From: Styela clava
Taxonomy: Eukaryota
Assembly (NCBI RefSeq): GCF_964204865.1
Contig: NC_135255.1
Coordinates: forward strand, 21,824,001 to 21,888,000
Reading direction: 5' to 3'
DNA: 64,000 nucleotides
The translations under genes were made by a program, and so were the position numbers. Every line of letters starts with the position of its first letter. Position 1 is the first letter of the stretch. This document shows, one piece after another, positions 1 through 44,875 of the stretch. The notes under the pieces were generated by a model. It did no database searches, was not told the DNA's origin, and worked only from the letters and a program-made list of their open reading frames with translations.

Positions 1-111
1 AAAATTAGAACACTCAACGAAATCGGCCATTTTATAATGGCACTGCAAAAATCAAAATTAAACATGTCTGTATTCATTCATAGCAGTTGATATCATGGCA
101 AAAAGGTCAGT

Positions 112-2059
112 TCAGTTCAATTCAGACACTTTATAGATGCCTCGCGCATTTATGAGATCTGGGGGACTGATACAACGTTTTATGCTGCTCCAGTCGTAAA
201 AAATCTGATCTTTCCGAAATGGCCATCTCCAGTTACATCCAGACTTCTCCATGACACTCACCTCGCACCCGTCAGTTGTGCGGGTTTTGACAATTCCAGG
301 GTATAATTCACCCTCATACGAAATTATAACATAATCACCAATGTTGCATTCTTCAAATGGCAAGTGATGAGCAGTTGAAACTACAGAGTGAGAGTTGGAT
401 GATTCAGGAGTAGAGGCTTCATCGCATTCATCGTCTGAGGAAACAATTTCAACCGTTGAATCTGAATCTTCAATATTTTGATTTGCTTGAGCTTTTTTTG
501 AAACCGTTTTTTCAAGTCTTGCCACATCTTCCTCACATGCGCTTTTCCCAGGTTCTACCTGAACCTTCTTTCTTGTTTTAGTTTCCTTTGCCACAGAAGA
601 TCTTAAATCTGAAATTTTCTCAAGAAATTTTTCACTGATAACATCAGAATCATCATGACTCGTAGTTCTTGGTAATCTACTGAGAACTTCTTCTTTATTG
701 AGCGGAACAAGTCCTGCTTTTTTAAATCCTGCAACTAGGTTGTTTGCTCCCCTGACATCAAGAGCAAAGCAGAGTTTGTTCAAAAGTGCTGGAAACTCAT
801 CTTTTCTTAGCGTTGCGGATGTCTGCCTTCTTTCTTTACTTTTCACAGAATTCAATATCGATCTCCAAGCGACTTTCATTGGCCTGAAATAGGCAATATC
901 CAGGGGTTGGGTGAGGTGCGTCGAATTAGGCGGTAGACATATGAAAGCTATATTGTGATCAAGACATGATTTCAGAACATCTGGACTGATATGGGAGGAT
1001 AAATTATCCCCAATGAGAACTTTTTTCCCATTTTGACGCTTCAGCCTAGGCAGCACCATTCGATTAAACCAATCTTGAAAACTAAATCCATCAAACCAGC
1101 CTGATCTTGATCTGTTGTATAGTGTCCCTGGTGGTCCTCCTTCAACCCAAGTGCTCCACAGATTCTCGGCTTTGTACACTACATACGGTGGCATCACTGC
1201 TCCTGCTGCATTCCCACAGAACATCAAACTTATTGCAGATTTTGTCGAATTCAGGATTCTTTCTGGGTATTTGCAGCCGCGCTTGCATATTATCTTCTTT
1301 TGCCCTAAAAATAAATGCTTTGATCACAATACAGTAATATTTATTATCCATACTAGACTGCAAGCCAAAGTGAAATTTTACATAACACCATAAATAGTTT
1401 AAAATTTGATTTGACGCAGTAAATATTTTAAAAAAGGGGATTAACAAAGAACGCTTGAAAAATTGAATACCGTAGTACTGTATATACTTAAAAGCAAAGT
1501 CACTCATACCTGGGTCATCAGTTAAGTTTGTTTCATCATAATTCCAAATATTTTCCGGGGGCACATCATCCAACTCTTCTTCGATGTTTTCAAAATATTT
1601 TTCAATAGTCTCACTCGATACCCCTGCCCTTTTCTTTTTTATATTCGTTGCGAATCGCACCGTTAGTTCTGAGTGCCTTTTTAAGAATGCTTTCACCCAT
1701 TCAACTCCAGGATAATTGCTGTGAAATTTACTGACAGTCACTCCTTTTGCATCAAGATAAGCTTTAACTATGCTTCTCAAATCTTCCTGTGCTATCGGAA
1801 AACCAAAACTGCTTACGGCTATGCAGTGCTCCACTAGAATTTTCTCAGTTTCTGCAGATAAAACTGTTTGCCCACCAAATTTTTTCATGTGCCTCAGTTT
1901 CAACTTATTCTTCAAAGTACTCCTAGGTATATTGAACTGTGCTGCAACGTTTCTTTGCGATTCTCCCCTTTTAATTGCTTCCAGAGCTCGCTGAAGTTTT
2001 TTCTCACTATAATCATGGTATCTTCTACTGCCCAAAACACGACTGAATTTTCTCACCAT
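112..2059 (-). CDS. pogo-like transposase, copy 1 (exons 2059-1510 and 1304-112; 580 aa)
   Basis: N-terminal psq/CENP-B-type HTHs (AAQFNIPRSTL; GVEWVKAFLKRH); catalytic NYDET...IGDN...QPLD with 35 residues between the 2nd and 3rd Asp. A GT-AG intron at 1509-1305 joins TDDPG to QKKIICKRGCKYPER in frame. Confidence 0.93.
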
Positions 2060-3048
2060 GATTTGAAATAAACTGTTTACATTTATAGATTAACTGGATG
2101 ACTAGAATGAGAAAATAAATTCGTTTTATTTCTGAAAAATAAAACAAAAAAGTAGGTTTGTATAGGGTAATAAGGTGGGCCAAAGTCAGTACCATATTAC
2201 ATGGAATTTTGCATTGTGGGCAAAAAACCTCCCTCATACGCCCCCAACTAGTTTAAACTTGTTCCAAACACCATAAAAACCTTCACAGAGAATATCTCTT
2301 CCAACCTGTAAAGAATAAGGACAATTGAATGTTTCTTTTTTGGACTTCTCAATAAAAGTACTGAGTTGCGATTTTTTTTTCAATTTTTTTATTTCTGACC
2401 CTCCAAATGAAAAAGTTTTTTTTCCCAAATATTTTTCATAAAGTGACAAGATTTTTTGTTGTATAATTATTGCTGCTGTTATTAACTACAGTATCAAAAC
2501 AAAATAAAATGGGAAATATCAAATAAAAGTAGATTTGGGTGGGTTTTAAACAAATTCTCAAAATGGGGCCAAAGTCAACCCGTGAGGTCAAAGTCACCCC
2601 GTTTTACGCCGTAAAGCGGGGTGACTATGACCCATTTTTGGTCTTTCAGTCAAAATATCTCGAATATTAAAAATCTATGAATTGCTATTCCGGGTCCAAA
2701 CTATGCATTTTAGAGGGGGTATACGTCGTGCATAATCATTGAACCAAAATATTTGTTTTTTCTATATTATTTTTTTTAATTTACGGTGGGCCAAAGTCAC
2801 CAGCAATTTCGGTACCACTTTGGCCCAGTGCCTATTTCTCCCCATAAATTAAGCTGTACCCATACTGAGACAAAGAAAACATTTATTACAGTGGGCTTTG
2901 GCCCACAGAGACTTTTTAAAAAAACAGAAACCCCAAAAAAATTAGAACACTCAACGAAATCGGCCATTTTATAATGGCACTGCAAAAATCAAAATTAAAC
3001 ATGTCTGTATTCATTCATAGCAGTTGATATCATGGCAAAAAGGTCAGT

Positions 3049-4996
3049 TCAGTTCAATTCAGACACTTTATAGATGCCTCGCGCATTTATGAGATCTGGG
3101 GGACTGATACAACGTTTTATGCTGCTCCAGTCGTAAAAAATCTGATCTTTCCGAAATGGCCATCTCCAGTTACATCCAGACTTCTCCATGACACTCACCT
3201 CGCACCCGTCAGTTGTGCGGGTTTTGACAATTCCAGGGTATAATTCACCCTCATACGAAATTATAACATAATCACCAATGTTGCATTCTTCAAATGGCAA
3301 GTGATGAGCAGTTGAAACTACAGAGTGAGAGTTGGATGATTCAGGAGTAGAGGCTTCATCGCATTCATCGTCTGAGGAAACAATTTCAACCGTTGAATCT
3401 GAATCTTCAATATTTTGATTTGCTTGAGCTTTTTTTGAAACCGTTTTTTCAAGTCTTGCCACATCTTCCTCACATGCGCTTTTCCCAGGTTCTACCTGAA
3501 CCTTCTTTCTTGTTTTAGTTTCCTTTGCCACAGAAGATCTTAAATCTGAAATTTTCTCAAGAAATTTTTCACTGATAACATCAGAATCATCATGACTCGT
3601 AGTTCTTGGTAATCTACTGAGAACTTCTTCTTTATTGAGCGGAACAAGTCCTGCTTTTTTAAATCCTGCAACTAGGTTGTTTGCTCCCCTGACATCAAGA
3701 GCAAAGCAGAGTTTGTTCAAAAGTGCTGGAAACTCATCTTTTCTTAGCGTTGCGGATGTCTGCCTTCTTTCTTTACTTTTCACAGAATTCAATATCGATC
3801 TCCAAGCGACTTTCATTGGCCTGAAATAGGCAATATCCAGGGGTTGGGTGAGGTGCGTCGAATTAGGCGGTAGACATATGAAAGCTATATTGTGATCAAG
3901 ACATGATTTCAGAACATCTGGACTGATATGGGAGGATAAATTATCCCCAATGAGAACTTTTTTCCCATTTTGACGCTTCAGCCTAGGCAGCACCATTCGA
4001 TTAAACCAATCTTGAAAACTAAATCCATCAAACCAGCCTGATCTTGATCTGTTGTATAGTGTCCCTGGTGGTCCTCCTTCAACCCAAGTGCTCCACAGAT
4101 TCTCGGCTTTGTACACTACATACGGTGGCATCACTGCTCCTGCTGCATTCCCACAGAACATCAAACTTATTGCAGATTTTGTCGAATTCAGGATTCTTTC
4201 TGGGTATTTGCAGCCGCGCTTGCATATTATCTTCTTTTGCCCTAAAAATAAATGCTTTGATCACAATACAGTAATATTTATTATCCATACTAGACTGCAA
4301 GCCAAAGTGAAATTTTACATAACACCATAAATAGTTTAAAATTTGATTTGACGCAGTAAATATTTTAAAAAAGGGGATTAACAAAGAACGCTTGAAAAAT
4401 TGAATACCGTAGTACTGTATATACTTAAAAGCAAAGTCACTCATACCTGGGTCATCAGTTAAGTTTGTTTCATCATAATTCCAAATATTTTCCGGGGGCA
4501 CATCATCCAACTCTTCTTCGATGTTTTCAAAATATTTTTCAATAGTCTCACTCGATACCCCTGCCCTTTTCTTTTTTATATTCGTTGCGAATCGCACCGT
4601 TAGTTCTGAGTGCCTTTTTAAGAATGCTTTCACCCATTCAACTCCAGGATAATTGCTGTGAAATTTACTGACAGTCACTCCTTTTGCATCAAGATAAGCT
4701 TTAACTATGCTTCTCAAATCTTCCTGTGCTATCGGAAAACCAAAACTGCTTACGGCTATGCAGTGCTCCACTAGAATTTTCTCAGTTTCTGCAGATAAAA
4801 CTGTTTGCCCACCAAATTTTTTCATGTGCCTCAGTTTCAACTTATTCTTCAAAGTACTCCTAGGTATATTGAACTGTGCTGCAACGTTTCTTTGCGATTC
4901 TCCCCTTTTAATTGCTTCCAGAGCTCGCTGAAGTTTTTTCTCACTATAATCATGGTATCTTCTACTGCCCAAAACACGACTGAATTTTCTCACCAT
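3049..4996 (-). CDS. pogo-like transposase, copy 2 (intron 4242-4446)
   Basis: Identical to copy 1 at +2937. Confidence 0.93.
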
Positions 4997-5985
4997 GATT
5001 TGAAATAAACTGTTTACATTTATAGATTAACTGGATGACTAGAATGAGAAAATAAATTCGTTTTATTTCTGAAAAATAAAACAAAAAAGTAGGTTTGTAT
5101 AGGGTAATAAGGTGGGCCAAAGTCAGTACCATATTACATGGAATTTTGCATTGTGGGCAAAAAACCTCCCTCATACGCCCCCAACTAGTTTAAACTTGTT
5201 CCAAACACCATAAAAACCTTCACAGAGAATATCTCTTCCAACCTGTAAAGAATAAGGACAATTGAATGTTTCTTTTTTGGACTTCTCAATAAAAGTACTG
5301 AGTTGCGATTTTTTTTTCAATTTTTTTATTTCTGACCCTCCAAATGAAAAAGTTTTTTTTCCCAAATATTTTTCATAAAGTGACAAGATTTTTTGTTGTA
5401 TAATTATTGCTGCTGTTATTAACTACAGTATCAAAACAAAATAAAATGGGAAATATCAAATAAAAGTAGATTTGGGTGGGTTTTAAACAAATTCTCAAAA
5501 TGGGGCCAAAGTCAACCCGTGAGGTCAAAGTCACCCCGTTTTACGCCGTAAAGCGGGGTGACTATGACCCATTTTTGGTCTTTCAGTCAAAATATCTCGA
5601 ATATTAAAAATCTATGAATTGCTATTCCGGGTCCAAACTATGCATTTTAGAGGGGGTATACGTCGTGCATAATCATTGAACCAAAATATTTGTTTTTTCT
5701 ATATTATTTTTTTTAATTTACGGTGGGCCAAAGTCACCAGCAATTTCGGTACCACTTTGGCCCAGTGCCTATTTCTCCCCATAAATTAAGCTGTACCCAT
5801 ACTGAGACAAAGAAAACATTTATTACAGTGGGCTTTGGCCCACAGAGACTTTTTAAAAAAACAGAAACCCCAAAAAAATTAGAACACTCAACGAAATCGG
5901 CCATTTTATAATGGCACTGCAAAAATCAAAATTAAACATGTCTGTATTCATTCATAGCAGTTGATATCATGGCAAAAAGGTCAGT

Positions 5986-7933
5986 TCAGTTCAATTCAGA
6001 CACTTTATAGATGCCTCGCGCATTTATGAGATCTGGGGGACTGATACAACGTTTTATGCTGCTCCAGTCGTAAAAAATCTGATCTTTCCGAAATGGCCAT
6101 CTCCAGTTACATCCAGACTTCTCCATGACACTCACCTCGCACCCGTCAGTTGTGCGGGTTTTGACAATTCCAGGGTATAATTCACCCTCATACGAAATTA
6201 TAACATAATCACCAATGTTGCATTCTTCAAATGGCAAGTGATGAGCAGTTGAAACTACAGAGTGAGAGTTGGATGATTCAGGAGTAGAGGCTTCATCGCA
6301 TTCATCGTCTGAGGAAACAATTTCAACCGTTGAATCTGAATCTTCAATATTTTGATTTGCTTGAGCTTTTTTTGAAACCGTTTTTTCAAGTCTTGCCACA
6401 TCTTCCTCACATGCGCTTTTCCCAGGTTCTACCTGAACCTTCTTTCTTGTTTTAGTTTCCTTTGCCACAGAAGATCTTAAATCTGAAATTTTCTCAAGAA
6501 ATTTTTCACTGATAACATCAGAATCATCATGACTCGTAGTTCTTGGTAATCTACTGAGAACTTCTTCTTTATTGAGCGGAACAAGTCCTGCTTTTTTAAA
6601 TCCTGCAACTAGGTTGTTTGCTCCCCTGACATCAAGAGCAAAGCAGAGTTTGTTCAAAAGTGCTGGAAACTCATCTTTTCTTAGCGTTGCGGATGTCTGC
6701 CTTCTTTCTTTACTTTTCACAGAATTCAATATCGATCTCCAAGCGACTTTCATTGGCCTGAAATAGGCAATATCCAGGGGTTGGGTGAGGTGCGTCGAAT
6801 TAGGCGGTAGACATATGAAAGCTATATTGTGATCAAGACATGATTTCAGAACATCTGGACTGATATGGGAGGATAAATTATCCCCAATGAGAACTTTTTT
6901 CCCATTTTGACGCTTCAGCCTAGGCAGCACCATTCGATTAAACCAATCTTGAAAACTAAATCCATCAAACCAGCCTGATCTTGATCTGTTGTATAGTGTC
7001 CCTGGTGGTCCTCCTTCAACCCAAGTGCTCCACAGATTCTCGGCTTTGTACACTACATACGGTGGCATCACTGCTCCTGCTGCATTCCCACAGAACATCA
7101 AACTTATTGCAGATTTTGTCGAATTCAGGATTCTTTCTGGGTATTTGCAGCCGCGCTTGCATATTATCTTCTTTTGCCCTAAAAATAAATGCTTTGATCA
7201 CAATACAGTAATATTTATTATCCATACTAGACTGCAAGCCAAAGTGAAATTTTACATAACACCATAAATAGTTTAAAATTTGATTTGACGCAGTAAATAT
7301 TTTAAAAAAGGGGATTAACAAAGAACGCTTGAAAAATTGAATACCGTAGTACTGTATATACTTAAAAGCAAAGTCACTCATACCTGGGTCATCAGTTAAG
7401 TTTGTTTCATCATAATTCCAAATATTTTCCGGGGGCACATCATCCAACTCTTCTTCGATGTTTTCAAAATATTTTTCAATAGTCTCACTCGATACCCCTG
7501 CCCTTTTCTTTTTTATATTCGTTGCGAATCGCACCGTTAGTTCTGAGTGCCTTTTTAAGAATGCTTTCACCCATTCAACTCCAGGATAATTGCTGTGAAA
7601 TTTACTGACAGTCACTCCTTTTGCATCAAGATAAGCTTTAACTATGCTTCTCAAATCTTCCTGTGCTATCGGAAAACCAAAACTGCTTACGGCTATGCAG
7701 TGCTCCACTAGAATTTTCTCAGTTTCTGCAGATAAAACTGTTTGCCCACCAAATTTTTTCATGTGCCTCAGTTTCAACTTATTCTTCAAAGTACTCCTAG
7801 GTATATTGAACTGTGCTGCAACGTTTCTTTGCGATTCTCCCCTTTTAATTGCTTCCAGAGCTCGCTGAAGTTTTTTCTCACTATAATCATGGTATCTTCT
7901 ACTGCCCAAAACACGACTGAATTTTCTCACCAT
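5986..7933 (-). CDS. pogo-like transposase, copy 3 (intron 7179-7383)
   Basis: Identical to copy 1 at +5874. Confidence 0.93.
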
Positions 7934-8922
7934 GATTTGAAATAAACTGTTTACATTTATAGATTAACTGGATGACTAGAATGAGAAAATAAATTCGTTT
8001 TATTTCTGAAAAATAAAACAAAAAAGTAGGTTTGTATAGGGTAATAAGGTGGGCCAAAGTCAGTACCATATTACATGGAATTTTGCATTGTGGGCAAAAA
8101 ACCTCCCTCATACGCCCCCAACTAGTTTAAACTTGTTCCAAACACCATAAAAACCTTCACAGAGAATATCTCTTCCAACCTGTAAAGAATAAGGACAATT
8201 GAATGTTTCTTTTTTGGACTTCTCAATAAAAGTACTGAGTTGCGATTTTTTTTTCAATTTTTTTATTTCTGACCCTCCAAATGAAAAAGTTTTTTTTCCC
8301 AAATATTTTTCATAAAGTGACAAGATTTTTTGTTGTATAATTATTGCTGCTGTTATTAACTACAGTATCAAAACAAAATAAAATGGGAAATATCAAATAA
8401 AAGTAGATTTGGGTGGGTTTTAAACAAATTCTCAAAATGGGGCCAAAGTCAACCCGTGAGGTCAAAGTCACCCCGTTTTACGCCGTAAAGCGGGGTGACT
8501 ATGACCCATTTTTGGTCTTTCAGTCAAAATATCTCGAATATTAAAAATCTATGAATTGCTATTCCGGGTCCAAACTATGCATTTTAGAGGGGGTATACGT
8601 CGTGCATAATCATTGAACCAAAATATTTGTTTTTTCTATATTATTTTTTTTAATTTACGGTGGGCCAAAGTCACCAGCAATTTCGGTACCACTTTGGCCC
8701 AGTGCCTATTTCTCCCCATAAATTAAGCTGTACCCATACTGAGACAAAGAAAACATTTATTACAGTGGGCTTTGGCCCACAGAGACTTTTTAAAAAAACA
8801 GAAACCCCAAAAAAATTAGAACACTCAACGAAATCGGCCATTTTATAATGGCACTGCAAAAATCAAAATTAAACATGTCTGTATTCATTCATAGCAGTTG
8901 ATATCATGGCAAAAAGGTCAGT

Positions 8923-10870
8923 TCAGTTCAATTCAGACACTTTATAGATGCCTCGCGCATTTATGAGATCTGGGGGACTGATACAACGTTTTATGCTGCT
9001 CCAGTCGTAAAAAATCTGATCTTTCCGAAATGGCCATCTCCAGTTACATCCAGACTTCTCCATGACACTCACCTCGCACCCGTCAGTTGTGCGGGTTTTG
9101 ACAATTCCAGGGTATAATTCACCCTCATACGAAATTATAACATAATCACCAATGTTGCATTCTTCAAATGGCAAGTGATGAGCAGTTGAAACTACAGAGT
9201 GAGAGTTGGATGATTCAGGAGTAGAGGCTTCATCGCATTCATCGTCTGAGGAAACAATTTCAACCGTTGAATCTGAATCTTCAATATTTTGATTTGCTTG
9301 AGCTTTTTTTGAAACCGTTTTTTCAAGTCTTGCCACATCTTCCTCACATGCGCTTTTCCCAGGTTCTACCTGAACCTTCTTTCTTGTTTTAGTTTCCTTT
9401 GCCACAGAAGATCTTAAATCTGAAATTTTCTCAAGAAATTTTTCACTGATAACATCAGAATCATCATGACTCGTAGTTCTTGGTAATCTACTGAGAACTT
9501 CTTCTTTATTGAGCGGAACAAGTCCTGCTTTTTTAAATCCTGCAACTAGGTTGTTTGCTCCCCTGACATCAAGAGCAAAGCAGAGTTTGTTCAAAAGTGC
9601 TGGAAACTCATCTTTTCTTAGCGTTGCGGATGTCTGCCTTCTTTCTTTACTTTTCACAGAATTCAATATCGATCTCCAAGCGACTTTCATTGGCCTGAAA
9701 TAGGCAATATCCAGGGGTTGGGTGAGGTGCGTCGAATTAGGCGGTAGACATATGAAAGCTATATTGTGATCAAGACATGATTTCAGAACATCTGGACTGA
9801 TATGGGAGGATAAATTATCCCCAATGAGAACTTTTTTCCCATTTTGACGCTTCAGCCTAGGCAGCACCATTCGATTAAACCAATCTTGAAAACTAAATCC
9901 ATCAAACCAGCCTGATCTTGATCTGTTGTATAGTGTCCCTGGTGGTCCTCCTTCAACCCAAGTGCTCCACAGATTCTCGGCTTTGTACACTACATACGGT
10001 GGCATCACTGCTCCTGCTGCATTCCCACAGAACATCAAACTTATTGCAGATTTTGTCGAATTCAGGATTCTTTCTGGGTATTTGCAGCCGCGCTTGCATA
10101 TTATCTTCTTTTGCCCTAAAAATAAATGCTTTGATCACAATACAGTAATATTTATTATCCATACTAGACTGCAAGCCAAAGTGAAATTTTACATAACACC
10201 ATAAATAGTTTAAAATTTGATTTGACGCAGTAAATATTTTAAAAAAGGGGATTAACAAAGAACGCTTGAAAAATTGAATACCGTAGTACTGTATATACTT
10301 AAAAGCAAAGTCACTCATACCTGGGTCATCAGTTAAGTTTGTTTCATCATAATTCCAAATATTTTCCGGGGGCACATCATCCAACTCTTCTTCGATGTTT
10401 TCAAAATATTTTTCAATAGTCTCACTCGATACCCCTGCCCTTTTCTTTTTTATATTCGTTGCGAATCGCACCGTTAGTTCTGAGTGCCTTTTTAAGAATG
10501 CTTTCACCCATTCAACTCCAGGATAATTGCTGTGAAATTTACTGACAGTCACTCCTTTTGCATCAAGATAAGCTTTAACTATGCTTCTCAAATCTTCCTG
10601 TGCTATCGGAAAACCAAAACTGCTTACGGCTATGCAGTGCTCCACTAGAATTTTCTCAGTTTCTGCAGATAAAACTGTTTGCCCACCAAATTTTTTCATG
10701 TGCCTCAGTTTCAACTTATTCTTCAAAGTACTCCTAGGTATATTGAACTGTGCTGCAACGTTTCTTTGCGATTCTCCCCTTTTAATTGCTTCCAGAGCTC
10801 GCTGAAGTTTTTTCTCACTATAATCATGGTATCTTCTACTGCCCAAAACACGACTGAATTTTCTCACCAT
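8923..10870 (-). CDS. pogo-like transposase, copy 4 (intron 10116-10320)
   Basis: Identical to copy 1 at +8811. Confidence 0.93.
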
Positions 10871-11859
10871 GATTTGAAATAAACTGTTTACATTTATAGA
10901 TTAACTGGATGACTAGAATGAGAAAATAAATTCGTTTTATTTCTGAAAAATAAAACAAAAAAGTAGGTTTGTATAGGGTAATAAGGTGGGCCAAAGTCAG
11001 TACCATATTACATGGAATTTTGCATTGTGGGCAAAAAACCTCCCTCATACGCCCCCAACTAGTTTAAACTTGTTCCAAACACCATAAAAACCTTCACAGA
11101 GAATATCTCTTCCAACCTGTAAAGAATAAGGACAATTGAATGTTTCTTTTTTGGACTTCTCAATAAAAGTACTGAGTTGCGATTTTTTTTTCAATTTTTT
11201 TATTTCTGACCCTCCAAATGAAAAAGTTTTTTTTCCCAAATATTTTTCATAAAGTGACAAGATTTTTTGTTGTATAATTATTGCTGCTGTTATTAACTAC
11301 AGTATCAAAACAAAATAAAATGGGAAATATCAAATAAAAGTAGATTTGGGTGGGTTTTAAACAAATTCTCAAAATGGGGCCAAAGTCAACCCGTGAGGTC
11401 AAAGTCACCCCGTTTTACGCCGTAAAGCGGGGTGACTATGACCCATTTTTGGTCTTTCAGTCAAAATATCTCGAATATTAAAAATCTATGAATTGCTATT
11501 CCGGGTCCAAACTATGCATTTTAGAGGGGGTATACGTCGTGCATAATCATTGAACCAAAATATTTGTTTTTTCTATATTATTTTTTTTAATTTACGGTGG
11601 GCCAAAGTCACCAGCAATTTCGGTACCACTTTGGCCCAGTGCCTATTTCTCCCCATAAATTAAGCTGTACCCATACTGAGACAAAGAAAACATTTATTAC
11701 AGTGGGCTTTGGCCCACAGAGACTTTTTAAAAAAACAGAAACCCCAAAAAAATTAGAACACTCAACGAAATCGGCCATTTTATAATGGCACTGCAAAAAT
11801 CAAAATTAAACATGTCTGTATTCATTCATAGCAGTTGATATCATGGCAAAAAGGTCAGT

Positions 11860-13807
11860 TCAGTTCAATTCAGACACTTTATAGATGCCTCGCGCATTTA
11901 TGAGATCTGGGGGACTGATACAACGTTTTATGCTGCTCCAGTCGTAAAAAATCTGATCTTTCCGAAATGGCCATCTCCAGTTACATCCAGACTTCTCCAT
12001 GACACTCACCTCGCACCCGTCAGTTGTGCGGGTTTTGACAATTCCAGGGTATAATTCACCCTCATACGAAATTATAACATAATCACCAATGTTGCATTCT
12101 TCAAATGGCAAGTGATGAGCAGTTGAAACTACAGAGTGAGAGTTGGATGATTCAGGAGTAGAGGCTTCATCGCATTCATCGTCTGAGGAAACAATTTCAA
12201 CCGTTGAATCTGAATCTTCAATATTTTGATTTGCTTGAGCTTTTTTTGAAACCGTTTTTTCAAGTCTTGCCACATCTTCCTCACATGCGCTTTTCCCAGG
12301 TTCTACCTGAACCTTCTTTCTTGTTTTAGTTTCCTTTGCCACAGAAGATCTTAAATCTGAAATTTTCTCAAGAAATTTTTCACTGATAACATCAGAATCA
12401 TCATGACTCGTAGTTCTTGGTAATCTACTGAGAACTTCTTCTTTATTGAGCGGAACAAGTCCTGCTTTTTTAAATCCTGCAACTAGGTTGTTTGCTCCCC
12501 TGACATCAAGAGCAAAGCAGAGTTTGTTCAAAAGTGCTGGAAACTCATCTTTTCTTAGCGTTGCGGATGTCTGCCTTCTTTCTTTACTTTTCACAGAATT
12601 CAATATCGATCTCCAAGCGACTTTCATTGGCCTGAAATAGGCAATATCCAGGGGTTGGGTGAGGTGCGTCGAATTAGGCGGTAGACATATGAAAGCTATA
12701 TTGTGATCAAGACATGATTTCAGAACATCTGGACTGATATGGGAGGATAAATTATCCCCAATGAGAACTTTTTTCCCATTTTGACGCTTCAGCCTAGGCA
12801 GCACCATTCGATTAAACCAATCTTGAAAACTAAATCCATCAAACCAGCCTGATCTTGATCTGTTGTATAGTGTCCCTGGTGGTCCTCCTTCAACCCAAGT
12901 GCTCCACAGATTCTCGGCTTTGTACACTACATACGGTGGCATCACTGCTCCTGCTGCATTCCCACAGAACATCAAACTTATTGCAGATTTTGTCGAATTC
13001 AGGATTCTTTCTGGGTATTTGCAGCCGCGCTTGCATATTATCTTCTTTTGCCCTAAAAATAAATGCTTTGATCACAATACAGTAATATTTATTATCCATA
13101 CTAGACTGCAAGCCAAAGTGAAATTTTACATAACACCATAAATAGTTTAAAATTTGATTTGACGCAGTAAATATTTTAAAAAAGGGGATTAACAAAGAAC
13201 GCTTGAAAAATTGAATACCGTAGTACTGTATATACTTAAAAGCAAAGTCACTCATACCTGGGTCATCAGTTAAGTTTGTTTCATCATAATTCCAAATATT
13301 TTCCGGGGGCACATCATCCAACTCTTCTTCGATGTTTTCAAAATATTTTTCAATAGTCTCACTCGATACCCCTGCCCTTTTCTTTTTTATATTCGTTGCG
13401 AATCGCACCGTTAGTTCTGAGTGCCTTTTTAAGAATGCTTTCACCCATTCAACTCCAGGATAATTGCTGTGAAATTTACTGACAGTCACTCCTTTTGCAT
13501 CAAGATAAGCTTTAACTATGCTTCTCAAATCTTCCTGTGCTATCGGAAAACCAAAACTGCTTACGGCTATGCAGTGCTCCACTAGAATTTTCTCAGTTTC
13601 TGCAGATAAAACTGTTTGCCCACCAAATTTTTTCATGTGCCTCAGTTTCAACTTATTCTTCAAAGTACTCCTAGGTATATTGAACTGTGCTGCAACGTTT
13701 CTTTGCGATTCTCCCCTTTTAATTGCTTCCAGAGCTCGCTGAAGTTTTTTCTCACTATAATCATGGTATCTTCTACTGCCCAAAACACGACTGAATTTTC
13801 TCACCAT
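11860..13807 (-). CDS. pogo-like transposase, copy 5 (intron 13053-13257)
   Basis: Identical to copy 1 at +11748. Confidence 0.93.
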
Positions 13808-14796
13808 GATTTGAAATAAACTGTTTACATTTATAGATTAACTGGATGACTAGAATGAGAAAATAAATTCGTTTTATTTCTGAAAAATAAAACAAAAAAG
13901 TAGGTTTGTATAGGGTAATAAGGTGGGCCAAAGTCAGTACCATATTACATGGAATTTTGCATTGTGGGCAAAAAACCTCCCTCATACGCCCCCAACTAGT
14001 TTAAACTTGTTCCAAACACCATAAAAACCTTCACAGAGAATATCTCTTCCAACCTGTAAAGAATAAGGACAATTGAATGTTTCTTTTTTGGACTTCTCAA
14101 TAAAAGTACTGAGTTGCGATTTTTTTTTCAATTTTTTTATTTCTGACCCTCCAAATGAAAAAGTTTTTTTTCCCAAATATTTTTCATAAAGTGACAAGAT
14201 TTTTTGTTGTATAATTATTGCTGCTGTTATTAACTACAGTATCAAAACAAAATAAAATGGGAAATATCAAATAAAAGTAGATTTGGGTGGGTTTTAAACA
14301 AATTCTCAAAATGGGGCCAAAGTCAACCCGTGAGGTCAAAGTCACCCCGTTTTACGCCGTAAAGCGGGGTGACTATGACCCATTTTTGGTCTTTCAGTCA
14401 AAATATCTCGAATATTAAAAATCTATGAATTGCTATTCCGGGTCCAAACTATGCATTTTAGAGGGGGTATACGTCGTGCATAATCATTGAACCAAAATAT
14501 TTGTTTTTTCTATATTATTTTTTTTAATTTACGGTGGGCCAAAGTCACCAGCAATTTCGGTACCACTTTGGCCCAGTGCCTATTTCTCCCCATAAATTAA
14601 GCTGTACCCATACTGAGACAAAGAAAACATTTATTACAGTGGGCTTTGGCCCACAGAGACTTTTTAAAAAAACAGAAACCCCAAAAAAATTAGAACACTC
14701 AACGAAATCGGCCATTTTATAATGGCACTGCAAAAATCAAAATTAAACATGTCTGTATTCATTCATAGCAGTTGATATCATGGCAAAAAGGTCAGT

Positions 14797-16744
14797 TCAG
14801 TTCAATTCAGACACTTTATAGATGCCTCGCGCATTTATGAGATCTGGGGGACTGATACAACGTTTTATGCTGCTCCAGTCGTAAAAAATCTGATCTTTCC
14901 GAAATGGCCATCTCCAGTTACATCCAGACTTCTCCATGACACTCACCTCGCACCCGTCAGTTGTGCGGGTTTTGACAATTCCAGGGTATAATTCACCCTC
15001 ATACGAAATTATAACATAATCACCAATGTTGCATTCTTCAAATGGCAAGTGATGAGCAGTTGAAACTACAGAGTGAGAGTTGGATGATTCAGGAGTAGAG
15101 GCTTCATCGCATTCATCGTCTGAGGAAACAATTTCAACCGTTGAATCTGAATCTTCAATATTTTGATTTGCTTGAGCTTTTTTTGAAACCGTTTTTTCAA
15201 GTCTTGCCACATCTTCCTCACATGCGCTTTTCCCAGGTTCTACCTGAACCTTCTTTCTTGTTTTAGTTTCCTTTGCCACAGAAGATCTTAAATCTGAAAT
15301 TTTCTCAAGAAATTTTTCACTGATAACATCAGAATCATCATGACTCGTAGTTCTTGGTAATCTACTGAGAACTTCTTCTTTATTGAGCGGAACAAGTCCT
15401 GCTTTTTTAAATCCTGCAACTAGGTTGTTTGCTCCCCTGACATCAAGAGCAAAGCAGAGTTTGTTCAAAAGTGCTGGAAACTCATCTTTTCTTAGCGTTG
15501 CGGATGTCTGCCTTCTTTCTTTACTTTTCACAGAATTCAATATCGATCTCCAAGCGACTTTCATTGGCCTGAAATAGGCAATATCCAGGGGTTGGGTGAG
15601 GTGCGTCGAATTAGGCGGTAGACATATGAAAGCTATATTGTGATCAAGACATGATTTCAGAACATCTGGACTGATATGGGAGGATAAATTATCCCCAATG
15701 AGAACTTTTTTCCCATTTTGACGCTTCAGCCTAGGCAGCACCATTCGATTAAACCAATCTTGAAAACTAAATCCATCAAACCAGCCTGATCTTGATCTGT
15801 TGTATAGTGTCCCTGGTGGTCCTCCTTCAACCCAAGTGCTCCACAGATTCTCGGCTTTGTACACTACATACGGTGGCATCACTGCTCCTGCTGCATTCCC
15901 ACAGAACATCAAACTTATTGCAGATTTTGTCGAATTCAGGATTCTTTCTGGGTATTTGCAGCCGCGCTTGCATATTATCTTCTTTTGCCCTAAAAATAAA
16001 TGCTTTGATCACAATACAGTAATATTTATTATCCATACTAGACTGCAAGCCAAAGTGAAATTTTACATAACACCATAAATAGTTTAAAATTTGATTTGAC
16101 GCAGTAAATATTTTAAAAAAGGGGATTAACAAAGAACGCTTGAAAAATTGAATACCGTAGTACTGTATATACTTAAAAGCAAAGTCACTCATACCTGGGT
16201 CATCAGTTAAGTTTGTTTCATCATAATTCCAAATATTTTCCGGGGGCACATCATCCAACTCTTCTTCGATGTTTTCAAAATATTTTTCAATAGTCTCACT
16301 CGATACCCCTGCCCTTTTCTTTTTTATATTCGTTGCGAATCGCACCGTTAGTTCTGAGTGCCTTTTTAAGAATGCTTTCACCCATTCAACTCCAGGATAA
16401 TTGCTGTGAAATTTACTGACAGTCACTCCTTTTGCATCAAGATAAGCTTTAACTATGCTTCTCAAATCTTCCTGTGCTATCGGAAAACCAAAACTGCTTA
16501 CGGCTATGCAGTGCTCCACTAGAATTTTCTCAGTTTCTGCAGATAAAACTGTTTGCCCACCAAATTTTTTCATGTGCCTCAGTTTCAACTTATTCTTCAA
16601 AGTACTCCTAGGTATATTGAACTGTGCTGCAACGTTTCTTTGCGATTCTCCCCTTTTAATTGCTTCCAGAGCTCGCTGAAGTTTTTTCTCACTATAATCA
16701 TGGTATCTTCTACTGCCCAAAACACGACTGAATTTTCTCACCAT
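14797..16744 (-). CDS. pogo-like transposase, copy 6 (intron 15990-16194)
   Basis: Identical to copy 1 at +14685. Confidence 0.93.
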
Positions 16745-17641
16745 GATTTGAAATAAACTGTTTACATTTATAGATTAACTGGATGACTAGAATGAGAAAA
16801 TAAATTCGTTTTATTTCTGAAAAATAAAACAAAAAAGTAGGTTTGTATAGGGTAATAAGGTGGGCCAAAGTCAGTACCATATTACATGGAATTTTGCATT
16901 GTGGGCAAAAAACCTCCCTCATACGCCCCCAACTAGTTTAAACTTGTTCCAAACACCATAAAAACCTTCACAGAGAATATCTCTTCCAACCTGTAAAGAA
17001 TAAGGACAATTGAATGTTTCTTTTTTGGACTTCTCAATAAAAGTACTGAGTTGCGATTTTTTTTTCAATTTTTTTATTTCTGACCCTCCAAATGAAAAAG
17101 TTTTTTTTCCCAAATATTTTTCATAAAGTGACAAGATTTTTTGTTGTATAATTATTGCTGCTGTTATTAACTACAGTATCAAAACAAAATAAAATGGGAA
17201 ATATCAAATAAAAGTAGATTTGGGTGGGTTTTAAACAAATTCTCAAAATGGGGCCAAAGTCAACCCGTGAGGTCAAAGTCACCCCGTTTTACGGTACTTA
17301 TTATGGCATGATATCTCCGTGGCCAAGTGACAGTTATGGGATCGATACTAGAACCAAAAAATATCTTCCCCCGCTTTATATGTAAGATTTTGAAAACACT
17401 GTTCCATACAAATCATGACTTCATGCACTGAAGTATATTTATTCTCATTTTGGATAATATATATTGCTTTGTTAATCTTAATTGTTGCAATGAGCATTTT
17501 TCAAAAATCTTGAATCACAAATTTGTGTAAACTAAATTTTTATAACATTCCTACTTGAGACAACTTACCGGTACTTGAGCTTTGAGCTTCAACCCTTCTA
17601 ACAATTTTAAAGCTTTTAGATTATTAAACTAAACAACATAC

Positions 17642-20600
17642 TTATCTGAACCTCCATGTTTGTTAGTCTTATGAGGAATTTCATCATTCCATATTATCTC
17701 TCCTATGTTGCTTCCATTTGTCCGAATCTCAAAGAGTAATCTTTCATTGAATGCTTTTTGGAGCAAGTCATTAAGGTAGGGGTGAGGCAAATATTCAATT
17801 AATTCCTTGGCCTCATATGAAACACCCTGCAAAATTAAACATAATAAATCATTCAACTTTCATCTTTGATACTTTGTTAAAACTGGTATAAACACCAGGT
17901 CATATGTTAAGCTTTAAACTAAAATCTCTGCAACTCAAGATTGTTTGGAATAAAATTGATGATTCCTTAGAAGCAGACAGTTGCAAAAGCATTAGTTGGT
18001 AATTTTGACGGGGGGATGTTTTCAAATAGCAAGTACTAATATATAAGGCAATACTTTAATTGAACAATCGGAATCTTTCTCTCTTAACATTGGATATCAA
18101 AACATTTGATTTCTGGTGAGGAGGAGGGCACACGTTTGAACAGAACAGCATCAGTGGCTCCTCATGCAGAGTTGTCTTTAAATAATATTCATTAAAAGGG
18201 AGTTTTAAATCTTTTAAAAAAGAAATCAACTATAATATAGCTATGATTAGGAGCAGAGTTAAAATATGATGAAACTAACGTTTTACTGATACACAAAAAA
18301 TCTACTGATATGTAAGAGGTTATTATGAAAGGACCAACATATTTTCAGGCACTGCATGCTTGCCAATTTATTTACATTGTTGGTGAGGTCGTGGATCTGG
18401 GATTTGAGGATTAATATGGAGAGAAGTAGCTAAACTATGTTGGCATTACAGGTTAAAAATCTTGGATTCAAGCACATTACTCAGTGCATAATGAAACAGG
18501 TAGGAGTATTTGATAAATTAGGTAGGCAATGCAACCAGACAGATTTCAGTACTACAATAAATAGTAGTGCCTTGCGTATCAGTGGCTGCTCATACATTTG
18601 GAATAAAAGACATGACAAAAGTTTCATAGAAAAGAATTTCATATTAAAAAGTTGACATTTTAGGCATTTGGTATCTTATAGTCGGACGAAATATCAGACC
18701 TAAGATAAATTATTCTTTGCACCAATTATTGCCAAAATTGAATAAACACTATTCCTGAAATAACATTCTCTGATATGGAATTGGGACATGTTCAACAGGA
18801 GTCTGAGAAAATCACAGTACAATTACATATGTGAAAATTTAATTCAGTAATGCAGAATAACTGATATAAACACAGCTTGGATTGATTTTTGCAATTTGCA
18901 ATGTCAGATTTTAAAGAAAGTCATACAATTTTCTTAGGGTGTAATGGAATTCAATTAATATTTAACCACTATTAATCAAATTTGTATTTAGAAGTTTTAA
19001 TTCTAAAACGTAAAATCAATATAAATCAACACAAGCAAGAATCTTGGTTCAGGTAAATATATAATTTAATATTCAACCAACTGAATTCATTATATGACTC
19101 ACATTTAGACTTCCAGCAGGGAATGAGTAGGTGATGACAAAAGTGTACAACTCTACACAACCTGGCAGTGATTCACGCAACCTTTCCACTGACATTCTTC
19201 CACCAGGTGGTTGTTGGTTGATGATTCTTAGACCAGATGAGCTAGCTTGACTTGAAGACTGAGATTCTGTAAATTGAAAATTATTTTAGTGAAAGATGAT
19301 CACAAGACATGATTCTGATTACGCTTAGAATAAAACAATAGGGCATTTTGTAATATTATATATATAAGCCCTTATGAAATCTTATAAGCCCCCACGACAG
19401 TGCTAGGCTCAAATCGTGTAATATATTTTTACCAATGCTTTTGCATATGAGTAATATTGAATATTTTATAAGAATCTACAATTATCTGTAAGTAACGACA
19501 TTGCCTGCCCAATCTGTTACACCCTGGGTGAGGTGTGGGATTTGAACCAGGGAGGCGTAATCTGCAATGGCAACGGCTAAGCCCAATGCTTCAACCACTG
19601 TGTCATCACCAACTGGATATTGGTTCATTTGGTTTTAACCTCGTTACTTTTAAAACAGGAATGAATGAAGTTGAGGTGACCTATTTTCCTAATTATGCTA
19701 AATATTATATCAGTGTTTATATTTTCTATGGATTAAAAATTATCACAATATTGTTCAGAATTATGTAAAACAATGAGCTAGACATGAACAATCCATAGTG
19801 AAATCAGACTCAGTGCTTACTTCAGTAATCTCAGTTATGAAACACAAATGCAGATTGTACCTGGAGTGTCCGTCCTGTTTCCACCCACTGCTCCCATCTG
19901 TGGTTCCTCGACATTCCTTGAGCTGTGAATACTCAATGCAGTGTTGCCCGGGGAAGTTACTGAATTTGCTCTAATACTTGTAGATGTTGGTTGCTGGACT
20001 GACTGATTAGAAGATTCTGAACTCTTTCTTGCCAGAGATAATATTTCATCAAAAAGTTTATCGTAGCATTTACGAGAGTCATTGACTAGAGTTTCCGAGC
20101 GGATGGTTTCTTCTAGAAATTTTAAGGGAAATTTTTTCAGGTCAAGAAGGCTGAACAGTTCATGAAAATTCTTTTTCCTTTTTTGAAGATCATGCTTTAT
20201 CCATCTAAGAGCTCCATGCCATTTAACAGTCTCAGAAGAATATTTTGTGTTTGGGGATTTGTAAATCCTTATGATGTCATCCTTGCTGATATCACAGAAC
20301 TCTTTTTTCTCAATGATTTGTTCGAAATTTGCTTCCAGGAATCGATTCATCACATTTGTCACAGTATTTGGGTTGGTAACTTGACGAGTTTCAGCCAGAT
20401 TCTTCAGGATGAAGCAGTTGTCAATCTCAAGATTTGTCTCAAGATTCTTGACATCAGAGAATAATGCAGTGATGACTGAATTCTTTGCAATGTCATTACT
20501 TTTCACCAGTGGTTCTTCCAACACAGTCTGCAGAAGAAATTTGAAAGGATAAGTCTGGATATTGATGACTGTTACAAGGTCGGCAAAACATCTGCATCTT

Positions 20601-21220
20601 TCTGCATCTTCATCTTTTGCTCTTGCCCATGTTATCATAGCTTGCCATGATGTTTGATAACTCACATTTGAAACTTTTATGTAACGCAGGAGATCTGGCT
20701 TAATAATGAACGGGAACATCTCAGAGGAAATTACTGATTTGAAATTAGTGATCAGCACCTGTTCTGCTTGTTCTTTTATATCAAGGCGATCGTACGCTTG
20801 AGCCAAATTGATGACAGAAAGACAATTGGTCTGAGAGAGATTGGTTTTCAAGTAATGAAAGCAAAAGTTTGTCAAGCCAACCATTTGTAACAGGTTGGAT
20901 GCTTGCAGGATTTGTTGAACATATTCCATTTTCAAATTTCCTACTCCTTTATACATGAATTCTATACATTGGGAAATCCCATTCTGATCGACATCCTTCA
21001 TATCGATAAAACCATCACGAGATTCTTTCATTTTGCTTGAAAACATCGCTTTAAAGTATCCTGACGACGCTGCCAAGACACAGCGATGAGCACGGAACGA
21101 TTTATCACCAACTTTGACATCAAAATTGCAGAGAATGTTTTGTTCTCTCAAGCTATCGAGTGATGTCATAAGCAAACCAGCTTGGGTTGAATTTGTTTTT
21201 TTAATGTAATTTTTATTCAT
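17642..21220 (-). CDS. BTB-BACK-BACK-Deltex C-terminal (DTC) protein, paralog 1, 3'-partial (exons 21220-19861, 19266-19103, 17826-17642; last exon expected left of the window, beyond the pogo array)
   Basis: BTB motif FRAHRCVLAASSGYFKAMF followed by two BACK-like repeats. GT-AG sites keep frame (phases 1, 0, 2) into QQPPGGRM...SLPG...VITYSFPAG and EYLP...LLQKAFNERLLF...IIWNDEIPHKTNKHGG, which match the Deltex C-terminal domain. Confidence 0.8.
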
Positions 21221-44195: not shown

Positions 44196-44240
44196 TATTC
44201 TAACAGCCGTTGATTGCGAGCAGAGAGAGAGAGAGAGAGA

Positions 44241-44875
44241 GCTAACTCGCCATGTCCATTTTCTTTATAATTGACGATCGACATCGCGAGTTCGAGAGAG
44301 AGAGAGAGGGCTAACTCGCCATGTCTTTATTCTTTATAATTGACGATCGACATCGCGAGTTCGAGAGAGAGGGCTAACTCGCCATGTCTTTATTCTTTAT
44401 AATTGACGATCGACATCGCGAGTTCGAGAGAGTGAGAGGGCTAACTCGCCATGTCTTTATTCTTTATAATTGACCATCGACATCGCCATTTCGAGAGAGT
44501 GAGAGGGCTAACTCGCCATGTCTTTATTCTTTATAATTGACGATCGACATCGCGAGTTCGAGAGAGAGAGAGGGCTAACTCGCCATGTCTTTATTCTTTA
44601 TAATTGACCATCGACATCGCGAGTTCGAGAGAGAGAGAGGGCTAACTCGCCATGTCTTTATTCTTTATAATTGACCATCGACATCGCGAGTTCGAGAGAG
44701 AGAGAGGGCTAACTCGCCATGTCTTTATTCTTTATAATTGACGATCGACATCGCGAGTTCGAGAGAGAGTGAGGGCTAACTCGCCATGTCTTTATTCTTT
44801 ATAATTGACCATCGACATCGCGAGTTCGAGAGAGAGAGAGGGCTAACTCGCCATGTCTTTATTCTTTATAATTAT
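44241..44875 (+). repeat. Ten tandem ~67-bp units (GCTAACTCGCCATG...(GA)n), subterminal repeats of the MULE
   Basis: Motif starts at 44241, 44310, 44373, 44440, 44507, 44574, 44641, 44708, 44775, 44842; the same motif is at both element termini. Confidence 0.92.

What the first reader, a model, noticed from the sequence alone, without database searches (positions are those of the whole stretch)
1..17294. At least 17 kb satellite-like concatemer of an intact, identical cut-and-paste transposon
Seen: six head-to-tail copies with identical ORF translations and an exact 2937-bp period, each with full coding capacity and TIRs. Cut-and-paste transposition normally gives dispersed single copies. Known precedent: the Bari1 heterochromatic cluster and tandem P elements in Drosophila. 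Inference: very recent amplification by rolling-circle or unequal exchange, i.e. a satellite being born from an active element inside a gene. The intact outer end could let the whole array, or sub-arrays, mobilise.
Basis: partly seen in the sequence, partly recalled or inferred. Interest (0 to 1): 0.8.

Follow-up and report, generated by a model that had tools for sequence, protein, structure and literature searches.

The report
Tandem array of active pogo transposon
In the sea squirt Styela clava, a young and still mobile cut-and-paste transposon sits as at least six perfectly identical head-to-tail copies inside a gene's intron, a rare early stage of a transposon turning into tandem repeat DNA of the kind known from Bari1 in fruit flies.

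Summary
The array has an exact 2937-bp period with no mismatch. It starts 328 bp left of the window and ends at 17294. In the assembly it is exactly 6.000 units (17,622 bp plus one terminal G), not open-ended.

The unit is a 2938-bp pogo-superfamily transposon. It has HTH_psq and DDE_1 domains, a DD35D triad, a 580-aa two-exon transposase, 24-bp TIRs and a TA duplication. The genome is Styela clava.

Ten dispersed copies also exist: six identical, one with a 6-bp deletion and three internally deleted. A spliced transcript and a polymorphic insertion point to current activity.

All five internal junctions lack the TA and the last G of the right end. This junction occurs nowhere else in the assembly. 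Both outer ends are complete and TA-flanked. That argues against re-insertion of a concatemer copied from a circle, and for growth in place from one ordinary insertion.

The array probably lies in the last intron of a Deltex-like paralog. Contig depths of one run suggest many more than five junctions, so six may be a collapsed minimum. I saw no junction-spanning read directly.

Closest precedents are the Bari1 arrays and the hobo I03 array. I file it as a new member of a known kind. The scan had not noted this on other DNA.

The parts
1..17294 (-). Head-to-tail array of six identical units. The true start is window coordinate -328 (C6:21823672). Units run -328..2608, 2609..5545, 5546..8482, 8483..11419, 11420..14356 and 14357..17294. 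The strand given is that of the transposase gene.
   Evidence: Exact 2937-bp period with zero mismatches. Boundaries and a 6.000-unit count.
14357..17294 (-). One complete 2938-bp element (unit 6, the only one in the array with a complete right end).
   Evidence: It is 100% identical to six dispersed full-length copies on C19, C9, C8, C4, C3 and C2. Each of these is flanked TA|CCGTAAAG..TTTTACGG|TA.
14357..14380 (+). Left terminal inverted repeat (24 bp).
   Evidence: 22 of 24 positions match the reverse complement of the right end.
17271..17294 (+). Right terminal inverted repeat, complete, ending ..ACGG.
17295..17296 (.). Right copy of the TA target-site duplication. The left copy lies at window -330..-329.
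   Evidence: All 11 insertion sites are TA-flanked.
14327..14386 (.). Internal junction 5 (14356|14357), with the two TIRs abutted. The same junction lies at 2608|2609, 5545|5546, 8482|8483 and 11419|11420. Each lacks the TA and the last G of the right end, forming a near-palindrome.
   Evidence: Five exact matches, all in this array and none elsewhere in the 377-Mb assembly. The single strand can form a hairpin of -20.6 kcal/mol, z = -7.8.
16195..16744 (-). Transposase exon 1 in unit 6 (Met1 to the first base of codon 184). It holds the HTH_psq domain and the first catalytic Asp (NYDET, D175).
   Evidence: Pfam HTH_psq; translation; 183/183 identity to RefSeq protein P0121.
15990..16194 (-). 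The 205-bp GT..AG intron of the transposase gene.
   Evidence: A spliced contig in run X5 skips these 205 bases at depth 17.6. The boundaries were read from the sequence.
14797..15989 (-). Transposase exon 2 in unit 6. It holds DDE_1 with D283 and D319 (DD35D), an acidic linker, a Tudor-like C-terminal domain and the stop codon.
   Evidence: Pfam DDE_1 at 2.8e-20; open frame; 100% identity to a Styela clava 580-aa protein.
17632..17856 (-). Host exon coding the middle of a Deltex C-terminal (DTC) domain, 337 bp right of the array.
   Evidence: Pfam DTC 3.3e-6, profile positions 46-113 of 133. It aligns to DTX3L residues 94-138. The presumed last exon ('..NGYPDYDH..*') lies left of the array at L015:8509-8610, which places the array in the intervening intron.
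19835..21220 (-). Neighbouring BTB-BACK open reading frame on the same strand, given as context.
   Evidence: Pfam BTB 1e-24 and BACK 1.6e-20.

Best explanation
This is a real and very young head-to-tail array of an autonomous, currently active pogo-superfamily (DD35D) transposon of Styela clava.

It most likely grew in place. One ordinary insertion landed at a TA in the last intron of a Deltex-like paralog.

A first tandem dimer then formed when a right end and a left end were joined with loss of G+TA. The route I favour is a second insertion into the flanking TA, which together with the element's own terminal G reads GG-TA-CT, close to the preferred target. The two abutted ends were then cut or deleted and rejoined, turning ACGG-TA-CCGT into ACG-CCGT.

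Two other routes give the same product. One is direct end-joining of ends cut on sister chromatids. The other is homologous recombination of an excised circle into the resident copy.

The dimer then expanded by out-of-register exchange or replication slippage, which copied the same junction into every unit.

Shown: the structure, the junctions, the intact outer ends with TA, the identity of all copies, and the evidence of activity. Inferred: the order of events and the expansion mechanism. The six units of the assembly are probably a minimum.
For: **Structure**
- Exact period, 6.000 units, and intact TA-flanked outer ends.
- Five identical junctions found only here.
- The outer right end has the terminal G that all internal right ends lack. 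The outer ends are therefore those of a canonical insertion.

**Element identity and activity**
- Pfam HTH_psq and DDE_1.
- Catalytic residues D175, D283 and D319, read.
- All 11 insertion sites are TA-flanked, with an (A)G-TA-C(T) preference.
- There are no substitutions in 43.6 kb of copies.
- Deletion derivatives exist.
- A spliced transcript is present in X5.
- An insertion in X14 sits at C9:20679948-77, which is empty in the reference.

**Independent data**
- An X1 contig crosses the right boundary at single-copy depth.
- The X1 right-end contig stops exactly at 17293, as expected if both ACG|G and ACG|C continuations exist.
- Depth lies left of 14357 that only a junction-bridging contig can supply.

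**Local context**
- The locus lies in a cluster of about 850 kb holding at least 25 paralogous units. Such a region is prone to out-of-register pairing.

**Precedents**
- Dimers formed by double insertion, frequent small deletions at hobo dimer junctions, and expansion of a hobo dimer to 13-19 copies (PMC5932611).
Against: - No dimer with the intermediate GG-TA-CC junction exists in this assembly.
- No read or contig across the junction was shown to me explicitly. The junction evidence from run X1 is arithmetic on binned contig depths, which the tool warns are not copy numbers.
- Perfect identity, and an array length close to a typical long-read length, are also what a collapsed or mis-resolved assembly would give.
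- I could not test whether any individual carries a single copy at this site.
- The three routes to the first dimer cannot be told apart from the sequence.
Confidence: 0.6

Rival explanations
1. This is the Bari1-type origin proposed by Marsano et al. An excised element circularised with loss of one nucleotide. The circle was copied by rolling-circle replication into a linear concatemer, which was then inserted here.
For: - The junction has no TA and has lost a terminal nucleotide, as expected of an end-joined circle.
- All junctions are identical.
- This model was proposed for the 80-copy and 6-copy Bari1 arrays, whose units each lack 2 nt (PMC8834629; PMC5932611).
Against: - A concatemer copied from such a circle has no complete right end. 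The array nonetheless ends ..ACGG|TA, with the G present and a canonical TA duplication.
- The array is an exact whole number of units with no partial edge unit. The Bari1 arrays, by contrast, end in a partial element, and one has a ~500-nt duplication.
- A circle that recombined homologously into a resident copy would fit the data, but that is growth in place and is counted under the best explanation.
Confidence: 0.12
2. The array is partly or wholly an assembly artefact. The true locus holds one or two copies, and the six identical units come from mis-joined reads of a high-copy identical repeat.
For: - Zero differences over 17.6 kb.
- All dispersed copies are identical too, so reads from different loci are interchangeable.
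- The array length is close to a typical HiFi read length.
- The table listed no junction-spanning contig.
- RNA run X5 shows no junction.
Against: - The head-to-tail junction sequence cannot arise from mixing reads of dispersed TA-flanked copies, yet it is present five times.
- In X1 the right-end contig branches exactly at 17293. Depth of about 460-710 lies left of 14357, where only a junction-bridging contig can be laid.
- Total element depth in X1 is 3-4 times what 13 full copies predict. That points to collapse, not expansion.
Confidence: 0.08
3. The array is real but far longer than assembled, roughly 35-50 units or 100-150 kb. The assembler collapsed a perfect repeat to about one read length. 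This is a rival on size only, not on nature.
For: In X1 the element contigs have depth 512-733 against 11.4-14 for unique flank contigs. That gives 37-64 equivalents against 13 full copies in the assembly. The junction-side depth of 460-710 gives 33-55 junction equivalents against 5. No leftover contig made of array units exists, since all 16 left ends lie in chromosomal contigs. Reads wholly inside the array would be absorbed silently (inference).
Against: - Summed contig word depths are not copy numbers, as the tool warns.
- The unique contigs may be at haplotype depth, which would halve the estimate.
- X1 carries a different local haplotype from the assembly. It may therefore be another individual, with more dispersed copies or a different array size.
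Confidence: 0.5

Closest known systems
Bari1 tandem arrays of Drosophila melanogaster: h39, about 80 copies (32-130 across strains), and a second cluster of six copies
   Same: Both involve an element of the IS630-Tc1-mariner group. Complete elements lie precisely head-to-tail. Every junction lacks the TA and shows the same tiny terminal loss, 2 nt in Bari1 and 1 nt here. The array is highly homogeneous, and one Bari1 cluster also has six copies (PMC8834629; PMC5932611).
   Different: - The Bari1 arrays are heterochromatic, fixed and old enough to be species-wide.
- They end in a partial element, and one is flanked by a ~500-nt duplication.
- The array here lies in an intron within a gene cluster and has a whole number of units.
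- Both its outer ends are intact, with a canonical TA duplication.
- It is 100% identical to mobile dispersed copies.
- It belongs to the pogo superfamily, not Tc1, and sits in a tunicate.
hobo euchromatic tandem array in D. melanogaster strain I03 (13-19 copies) and P-element or hobo tandem dimers (McGurk and Barbash 2018)
   Same: Both are very recent arrays of a currently active DNA transposon at a single euchromatic locus. All units descend from one dimer and share one junction. Small deletions at dimer junctions are common for hobo.
   Different: The hobo array keeps the 8-bp target duplication between units, which is direct proof of double insertion. Here the TA is absent, so double insertion can only be inferred, with a 3-bp loss. 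hobo is also of another superfamily (hAT).
P-element-related array of Drosophila guanche
   Same: It is a tandem array derived from a cut-and-paste element (cited in PMC5932611).
   Different: Its units lack about 100 nt of terminal sequence and are immobile relics. Here the units are coding-intact and lack only one nucleotile-end base at one end.
Bacterial IS dimers with abutted ends, such as (IS30)2 and (IS21)2 (from my own knowledge, not tested here)
   Same: Two element ends lie abutted with only a few base pairs, or none, between them. Head-to-tail dimers exist as a distinct structural form of a DDE transposon.
   Different: In those IS families the abutted junction is a reactive transposition intermediate made by the transposase itself. 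Nothing here shows that this junction is reactive. The host is eukaryotic and the array has many units.

Membership tests
pogo superfamily of IS630-Tc1-mariner transposons | DDE_1-type catalytic domain with a D,D,D triad | tested here: met
   Pfam DDE_1 at 2.8e-20. D175 (NYDET), D283 (IGDN) and D319 (QPLD) were read. The spacing is DD35D, within the range given for pogo families in PMC7386202.
pogo superfamily of IS630-Tc1-mariner transposons | N-terminal helix-turn-helix DNA-binding domain (CENP-B_N, HTH_psq, HTH_Tnp_Tc5 or Brk types) | tested here: met
   Pfam HTH_psq at 5.3e-6, above its cut-off, at residues 19-58 of exon 1.
pogo superfamily of IS630-Tc1-mariner transposons | TA target-site duplication and short terminal inverted repeats | tested here: met
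   All 11 insertion sites are TA-flanked. The TIR is 24 bp with 22/24 matching.
Passer family of pogo | DD35D with BrkDBD and/or HTH_Tnp_Tc5 DNA-binding motifs; transposase of 400-500 aa | tested here: not met
   DD35D is met. The only DNA-binding motif found is HTH_psq, and the protein has 580 aa. PMC7386202 gives HTH_psq with DD35D for Fot/Fot-like elements. No phylogeny was made, so the family is left unassigned.
Autonomous, currently active transposon | Intact gene, transcription, polymorphic insertions with empty sites, and near-zero divergence among copies | tested here: met
   - Open 580-codon gene.
- Spliced contig in X5.
- Insertion in X14 at a site that is empty in the reference.
- No substitutions in 43.6 kb of copies.
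- Transposition itself was not assayed.
Bari1-type transposon tandem array | Complete elements head-to-tail, with the same small terminal deletion and no target duplication at every junction | tested here: met
   Five identical junctions lack the TA and the last G of the right end.
Bari1-type transposon tandem array | Array edges non-canonical (partial edge element, no normal target duplication), as expected of an inserted rolling-circle concatemer | tested here: not met
   Exactly 6.000 units, both outer ends complete, and TA on both sides.
Bari1-type transposon tandem array | Heterochromatic location, tens of copies, fixed in the species | tested here: inconclusive
   - The array lies in an intron within a gene cluster, 2.4 Mb from the end of a 24.3-Mb contig.
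- The assembly holds six units, but X1 depths suggest 30 or more.
- The right boundary is present in X1. This flank is not seen in X14.
- The chromatin state is unknown.
Tandem dimer or array formed by double insertion (McGurk and Barbash) | Target-site duplication retained between the units | tested here: not met
   A search allowing 0-12 nt between the ends found only the TA-less junction. Double insertion remains possible only with a later 3-bp loss (inference).
Satellite DNA | Long arrays (tens of kb to Mb) of a non-coding unit, usually at several loci or in heterochromatin | tested here: not met
   There is one locus of 17.6 kb as assembled, and every unit is protein-coding. At most this is a precursor.

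The most novel reading that the evidence does not exclude
The assembled six units are the collapsed stump of an array of about 35-50 units (over 100 kb), made entirely of intact, transcribable transposase genes. It began when an excised circular copy recombined into the resident element. This would make it a protein-coding satellite at birth in a chordate. It would also be the first case where the founding steps of a Bari1-like array can still be read from intact ends, and the array might act as a transposase-dosage or small-RNA-producing locus.
Probability: 0.15. Interest if true: 0.75.

Novelty: new member of a known kind. Interest (0 to 1): 0.5.

Why it matters
How a mobile element turns into tandem repeat DNA is usually inferred from old, degraded arrays. 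A 2022 review of Bari1 states that its precise head-to-tail organisation still has no comparable described example (PMC8834629).

This array is a second case of the same design, in a different superfamily and phylum. It was caught so early that every unit is identical to the mobile copies and the original insertion ends and TA duplication survive.

That lets the competing origin models make different, checkable predictions at one locus. The models are rolling circle plus re-insertion, double insertion, and sister-chromatid end joining. The relevant checks are single-copy alleles at the same TA, GG-TA-CC dimers, and copy-number ladders among individuals.

The array is also a practical warning. 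Perfect multi-kb tandem repeats of about read length are probably under-counted in long-read assemblies.

Tried and rejected
- **TRF** does not see the array, because its period limit is 500. I used a direct period test instead.
- **Extent to the left.** I fetched 100 kb to the left expecting a longer array. It ends 328 bp outside the window.
- **Other junction forms.** A search for any other right-left junction with 0-12 nt between the ends found none outside this array.
- **Alternative haplotype.** I looked for a second haplotype contig of the locus to compare copy number or find an empty site. The flanks match only 75-90% paralogs, so no haplotig exists.
- **Reads.**
  - The single read-laying run returned only contigs of older runs.
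  - The raw Hi-C run laid no reads at all.
  - The junction contig, if present, was not among the listed records, so the junction test is indirect.
- **Metagenomes.** A scan of metagenome contigs for the junction found nothing.
- **Presumed last DTC exon.** The 33-aa piece gave no match in Pfam or in the solved-structure sequences on its own. Its assignment rests on the GYPD motif, its position and its conservation among paralogs.
- **Passer membership** is rejected because the DNA-binding motif type does not fit.
- **Re-insertion of a rolling-circle concatemer** is rejected as the main model because of the intact outer right end.
- **Spliced protein.** I searched the transposase exon by exon. 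Full-length comparisons used database proteins P0001 and P0121.


Full report
**1. The observation**

A direct period test shows that window positions 1..14356 equal positions 2938..17293 without a single mismatch, and that periodicity stops at 17293. TRF missed the array only because its period limit is 500.

The window is G000:C6:21824001-21888000, in a 377-Mb assembly of 380 contigs. I fetched 100 kb to the left. The array begins only 328 bp before the window, at C6:21823672, on the first base of a unit. It ends at window 17293, and the next base is the element's own last G. In the assembly it is therefore exactly 6.000 units of 2937 bp, or 17,622 bp.

- The left flank reads ..AATGTAATA|CCGTAAAG.
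- The right flank reads ..GTTTTACGG|TACTTATT.
- The five internal junctions all read GTTTTACG|CCGTAAAG.

**2. What the unit is**

Ten dispersed copies define the element. It is 2938 bp long, CCGTAAAG...CTTTTACGG, always between two TAs, with 24-bp TIRs matching at 22 of 24 positions.

The minus strand carries a two-exon gene. For unit 6:
- Exon 1 is 16744..16195.
- The intron is 16194..15990. It has GT..AG ends and is removed in a contig of run X5 at depth 17.6.
- Exon 2 is 15989..14797.

Exon 1 has Pfam HTH_psq and the NYDET motif. Exon 2 has Pfam DDE_1 with the IGDN and QPLD motifs.

I searched the exons separately and did not join them. The database holds the matching 580-aa protein P0121. 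It is 183/183 identical over exon 1 and differs from P0001 at one residue, and P0001 is itself 100% identical over exon 2. The sources name it 'jerky protein homolog-like [Styela clava]', so the organism is the sea squirt Styela clava.

The triad is D175, D283, D319, that is DD35D. This places the element in the pogo superfamily (PMC7386202). The DNA-binding motif does not fit the Passer family, and I made no phylogeny, so I leave the family open. The next relatives are only about 51% identical.

**3. The element is young and active**

- The assembly holds exactly 16 left and 16 right ends: 6 in the array and 10 dispersed.
- Six dispersed copies are 100% identical to the array unit.
- One dispersed copy has a 6-bp in-frame deletion and encodes the 578-aa protein P0122.
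- Three dispersed copies have internal deletions: 918 bp and 1231 bp, each with 1-nt microhomology, and one complex.
- No base substitution is seen in 43.6 kb of copies. With an assumed mutation rate of 1e-8 to 1e-9 per site per generation, mean copy age is below roughly 7,000-70,000 generations (the rate is an assumption).
- X5 contigs cover the whole element and include the spliced form.
- X5 carries only A at 16542, which gives S68F, the P0001 variant. The assembly and X1 carry only G.
- A contig of run X14 joins the left end to a flank that lies at C9:20679948-77 in the reference. That site is empty there and reads AGA-TA-CTC. This is a polymorphic insertion.
- X1 also shows a deletion joint (14646>15043) that is absent from the assembly.

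**4. The junction and what it excludes**

A complete right end abutting a complete left end through a shared TA would read ACGG-TA-CCGT. The array reads ACG-CCGT, so G+TA are missing. The identical junction occurs five times and nowhere else in the genome, even when 0-12 nt are allowed between the ends.

The key point is that the last unit ends ACGG|TA. The terminal G that every internal right end lacks is present at the outer edge, together with a canonical TA duplication, and the unit count is a whole number.

A linear concatemer copied from an end-joined circle carries no complete right end. The Bari1-type model, rolling circle followed by insertion, therefore does not explain the outer edge. 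In the Bari1 arrays the edges are in fact partial, and one array has a ~500-nt duplication (PMC5932611).

The outer ends look like those of one ordinary insertion, and the array looks grown in place. Three routes to the first dimer fit equally well:
- (a) A second insertion into the flanking TA, followed by loss of G+TA. The eleven sites show an (A)G-TA-C(T) preference. The resident element's end rebuilds GG-TA-CT at this flank, which makes that TA a good target.
- (b) End-joining of a right end cut on one sister chromatid to a left end cut on the other.
- (c) Homologous recombination of an excised, end-joined circle into the resident copy.

I favour (a). Double insertion and small deletions at dimer junctions are documented for P and hobo, and a hobo dimer expanded to 13-19 copies in one strain (PMC5932611). 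The sequence cannot decide between the routes.

The abutted TIRs form a strong hairpin as a single strand, at -20.6 kcal/mol with z = -7.8. That could favour such deletions (inference).

Expansion from two units to six by out-of-register exchange is also inferred. The locus lies within a cluster of about 850 kb holding at least 25 paralogous units at 75-90% identity. Mispairing is likely in such a region.

**5. Is it inside a gene?**

- A minus-strand exon 337 bp right of the array matches Pfam DTC profile positions 46-113 and DTX3L residues 94-138.
- Left of the array, L015:8509-8610 (minus strand) encodes '..NGYPDYDHTRELRAALMVKLKAAGFEY*'.
- From my own knowledge of Deltex proteins, this GYPD-containing tail is the end of the DTC domain.
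- The piece is too short to match anything on its own.
- It does lie in the block conserved among the paralogs.

The array therefore probably sits in the last intron of a Deltex-like gene, in the same orientation as that gene. It stretches an intron of about 1.4 kb to about 19 kb. This is likely but not proven.

**6. Independent data and copy number**

Only contigs of older runs were on hand. The one raw-read run (Hi-C, labelled as another organism) laid no reads.

Evidence from run X1:
- A contig at depth 11.4 runs from inside the right end into the flank without any difference.
- The right-end contig stops exactly at 17293, as expected if two continuations, G and C, exist.
- The bin 14182-14372 has depth 229.
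- The same bin in X5 has exactly what the left-end contig alone gives.

The right-end contig itself was laid at 16650-17293. Depth left of 14357 therefore needs a contig that bridges the junction.

The arithmetic reproduces a control bin to within 0.2%. It gives a junction depth of about 460-710, against 11.4-14 for unique contigs. Total element depth is 512-733, that is 37-64 equivalents against 13 full copies in the assembly.

Both numbers point the same way: X1 holds several-fold more junctions than five. The tool warns that such depths are not copy numbers. The unique contigs may be at haplotype depth. X1 also differs from the assembly in the flank (six substitutions and one indel at 18356-18419), so it may be another individual.

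My reading is that the junction is real, and that six units is probably a floor set by collapse of a perfect repeat to about one read length. I put the probability of that at about 0.5-0.6.

A metagenome scan for the junction found nothing.

**7. Comparison and verdict**

The closest known cases are:
- The Bari1 arrays of D. melanogaster, with about 80 and six copies and 2 nt missing from each unit. A 2022 review says they have no comparable described example (PMC8834629).
- The hobo I03 array.
- The P-related array of D. guanche (PMC5932611).

This array shares the Bari1 design. It differs in four ways:
- Its edges are intact and canonical.
- It lies in an intron.
- It is fully identical to mobile copies.
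- It belongs to the pogo superfamily and sits in a tunicate.

It is a new member of a known kind, caught unusually early.

Noticed in passing
window 14800-15010 (- strand), the last ~70 codons of the transposase in every unit: The transposase ends in a conserved beta-barrel domain with no Pfam match. AlphaFold2 models it with pLDDT above 90. The best structural matches are the PHF19 and PHF1 Tudor domains, which read H3K36me3, with TM 0.7-0.8 on the target but E of only 0.05. Residues G57, W79, W81, P82, D86 and Y90 of the 117-aa piece are invariant in 28 relatives. It may be a chromatin-reading module that steers insertion.
   Followed up: partly
Insertion sites of L001-L009 and L011, and the array flanks (window 17295-17300): The eleven insertion sites show a palindromic preference, (A)G-TA-C(T): G at -1 in 7 of 11, C at +1 in 9 of 11, and T at +2 in 9 of 11. 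The element's own terminal C and G rebuild G-TA-C at both flanks of every copy.
   Followed up: partly
G000:C6 about 21.70-22.55 Mb, including window 17300-64000: The flanks belong to a cluster of about 850 kb holding at least 25 paralogous units at 75-90% identity. The units carry BTB-BACK and Deltex C-terminal coding pieces and form two blocks of opposite orientation. The DTC exon next to the array reads EIPHKT where DTX3L has IHHKT.
   Followed up: partly
L042 (G000:C9:20679948-20679977) and run X14: A run labelled as a different organism holds the element at 100% identity, joined to a flank that exists in the Styela clava reference as an empty TA site. It holds almost none of the array's own flank. 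This could be mislabelling, a mixed sample or a close relative, and was not resolved. The raw Hi-C run of the same study laid no reads.
   Followed up: partly
window 16542 (and the same position in each unit): Contigs of RNA-type run X5 carry only A here, which changes Ser68 to Phe (the P0001 variant). All 16 copies in the assembly, and run X1, carry G. Different samples therefore seem to hold different, internally uniform variants of the element.
   Followed up: no
window 44227-44873: A 67-bp unit is repeated 9.7 times at 95% match. A related 17-bp motif lies at 49138-49173.
   Followed up: no
window 14646>15043 (run X1): A contig in X1 at depth 8.5 skips 396 bp of the element. This deletion derivative is not present in the assembly.
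   Followed up: no
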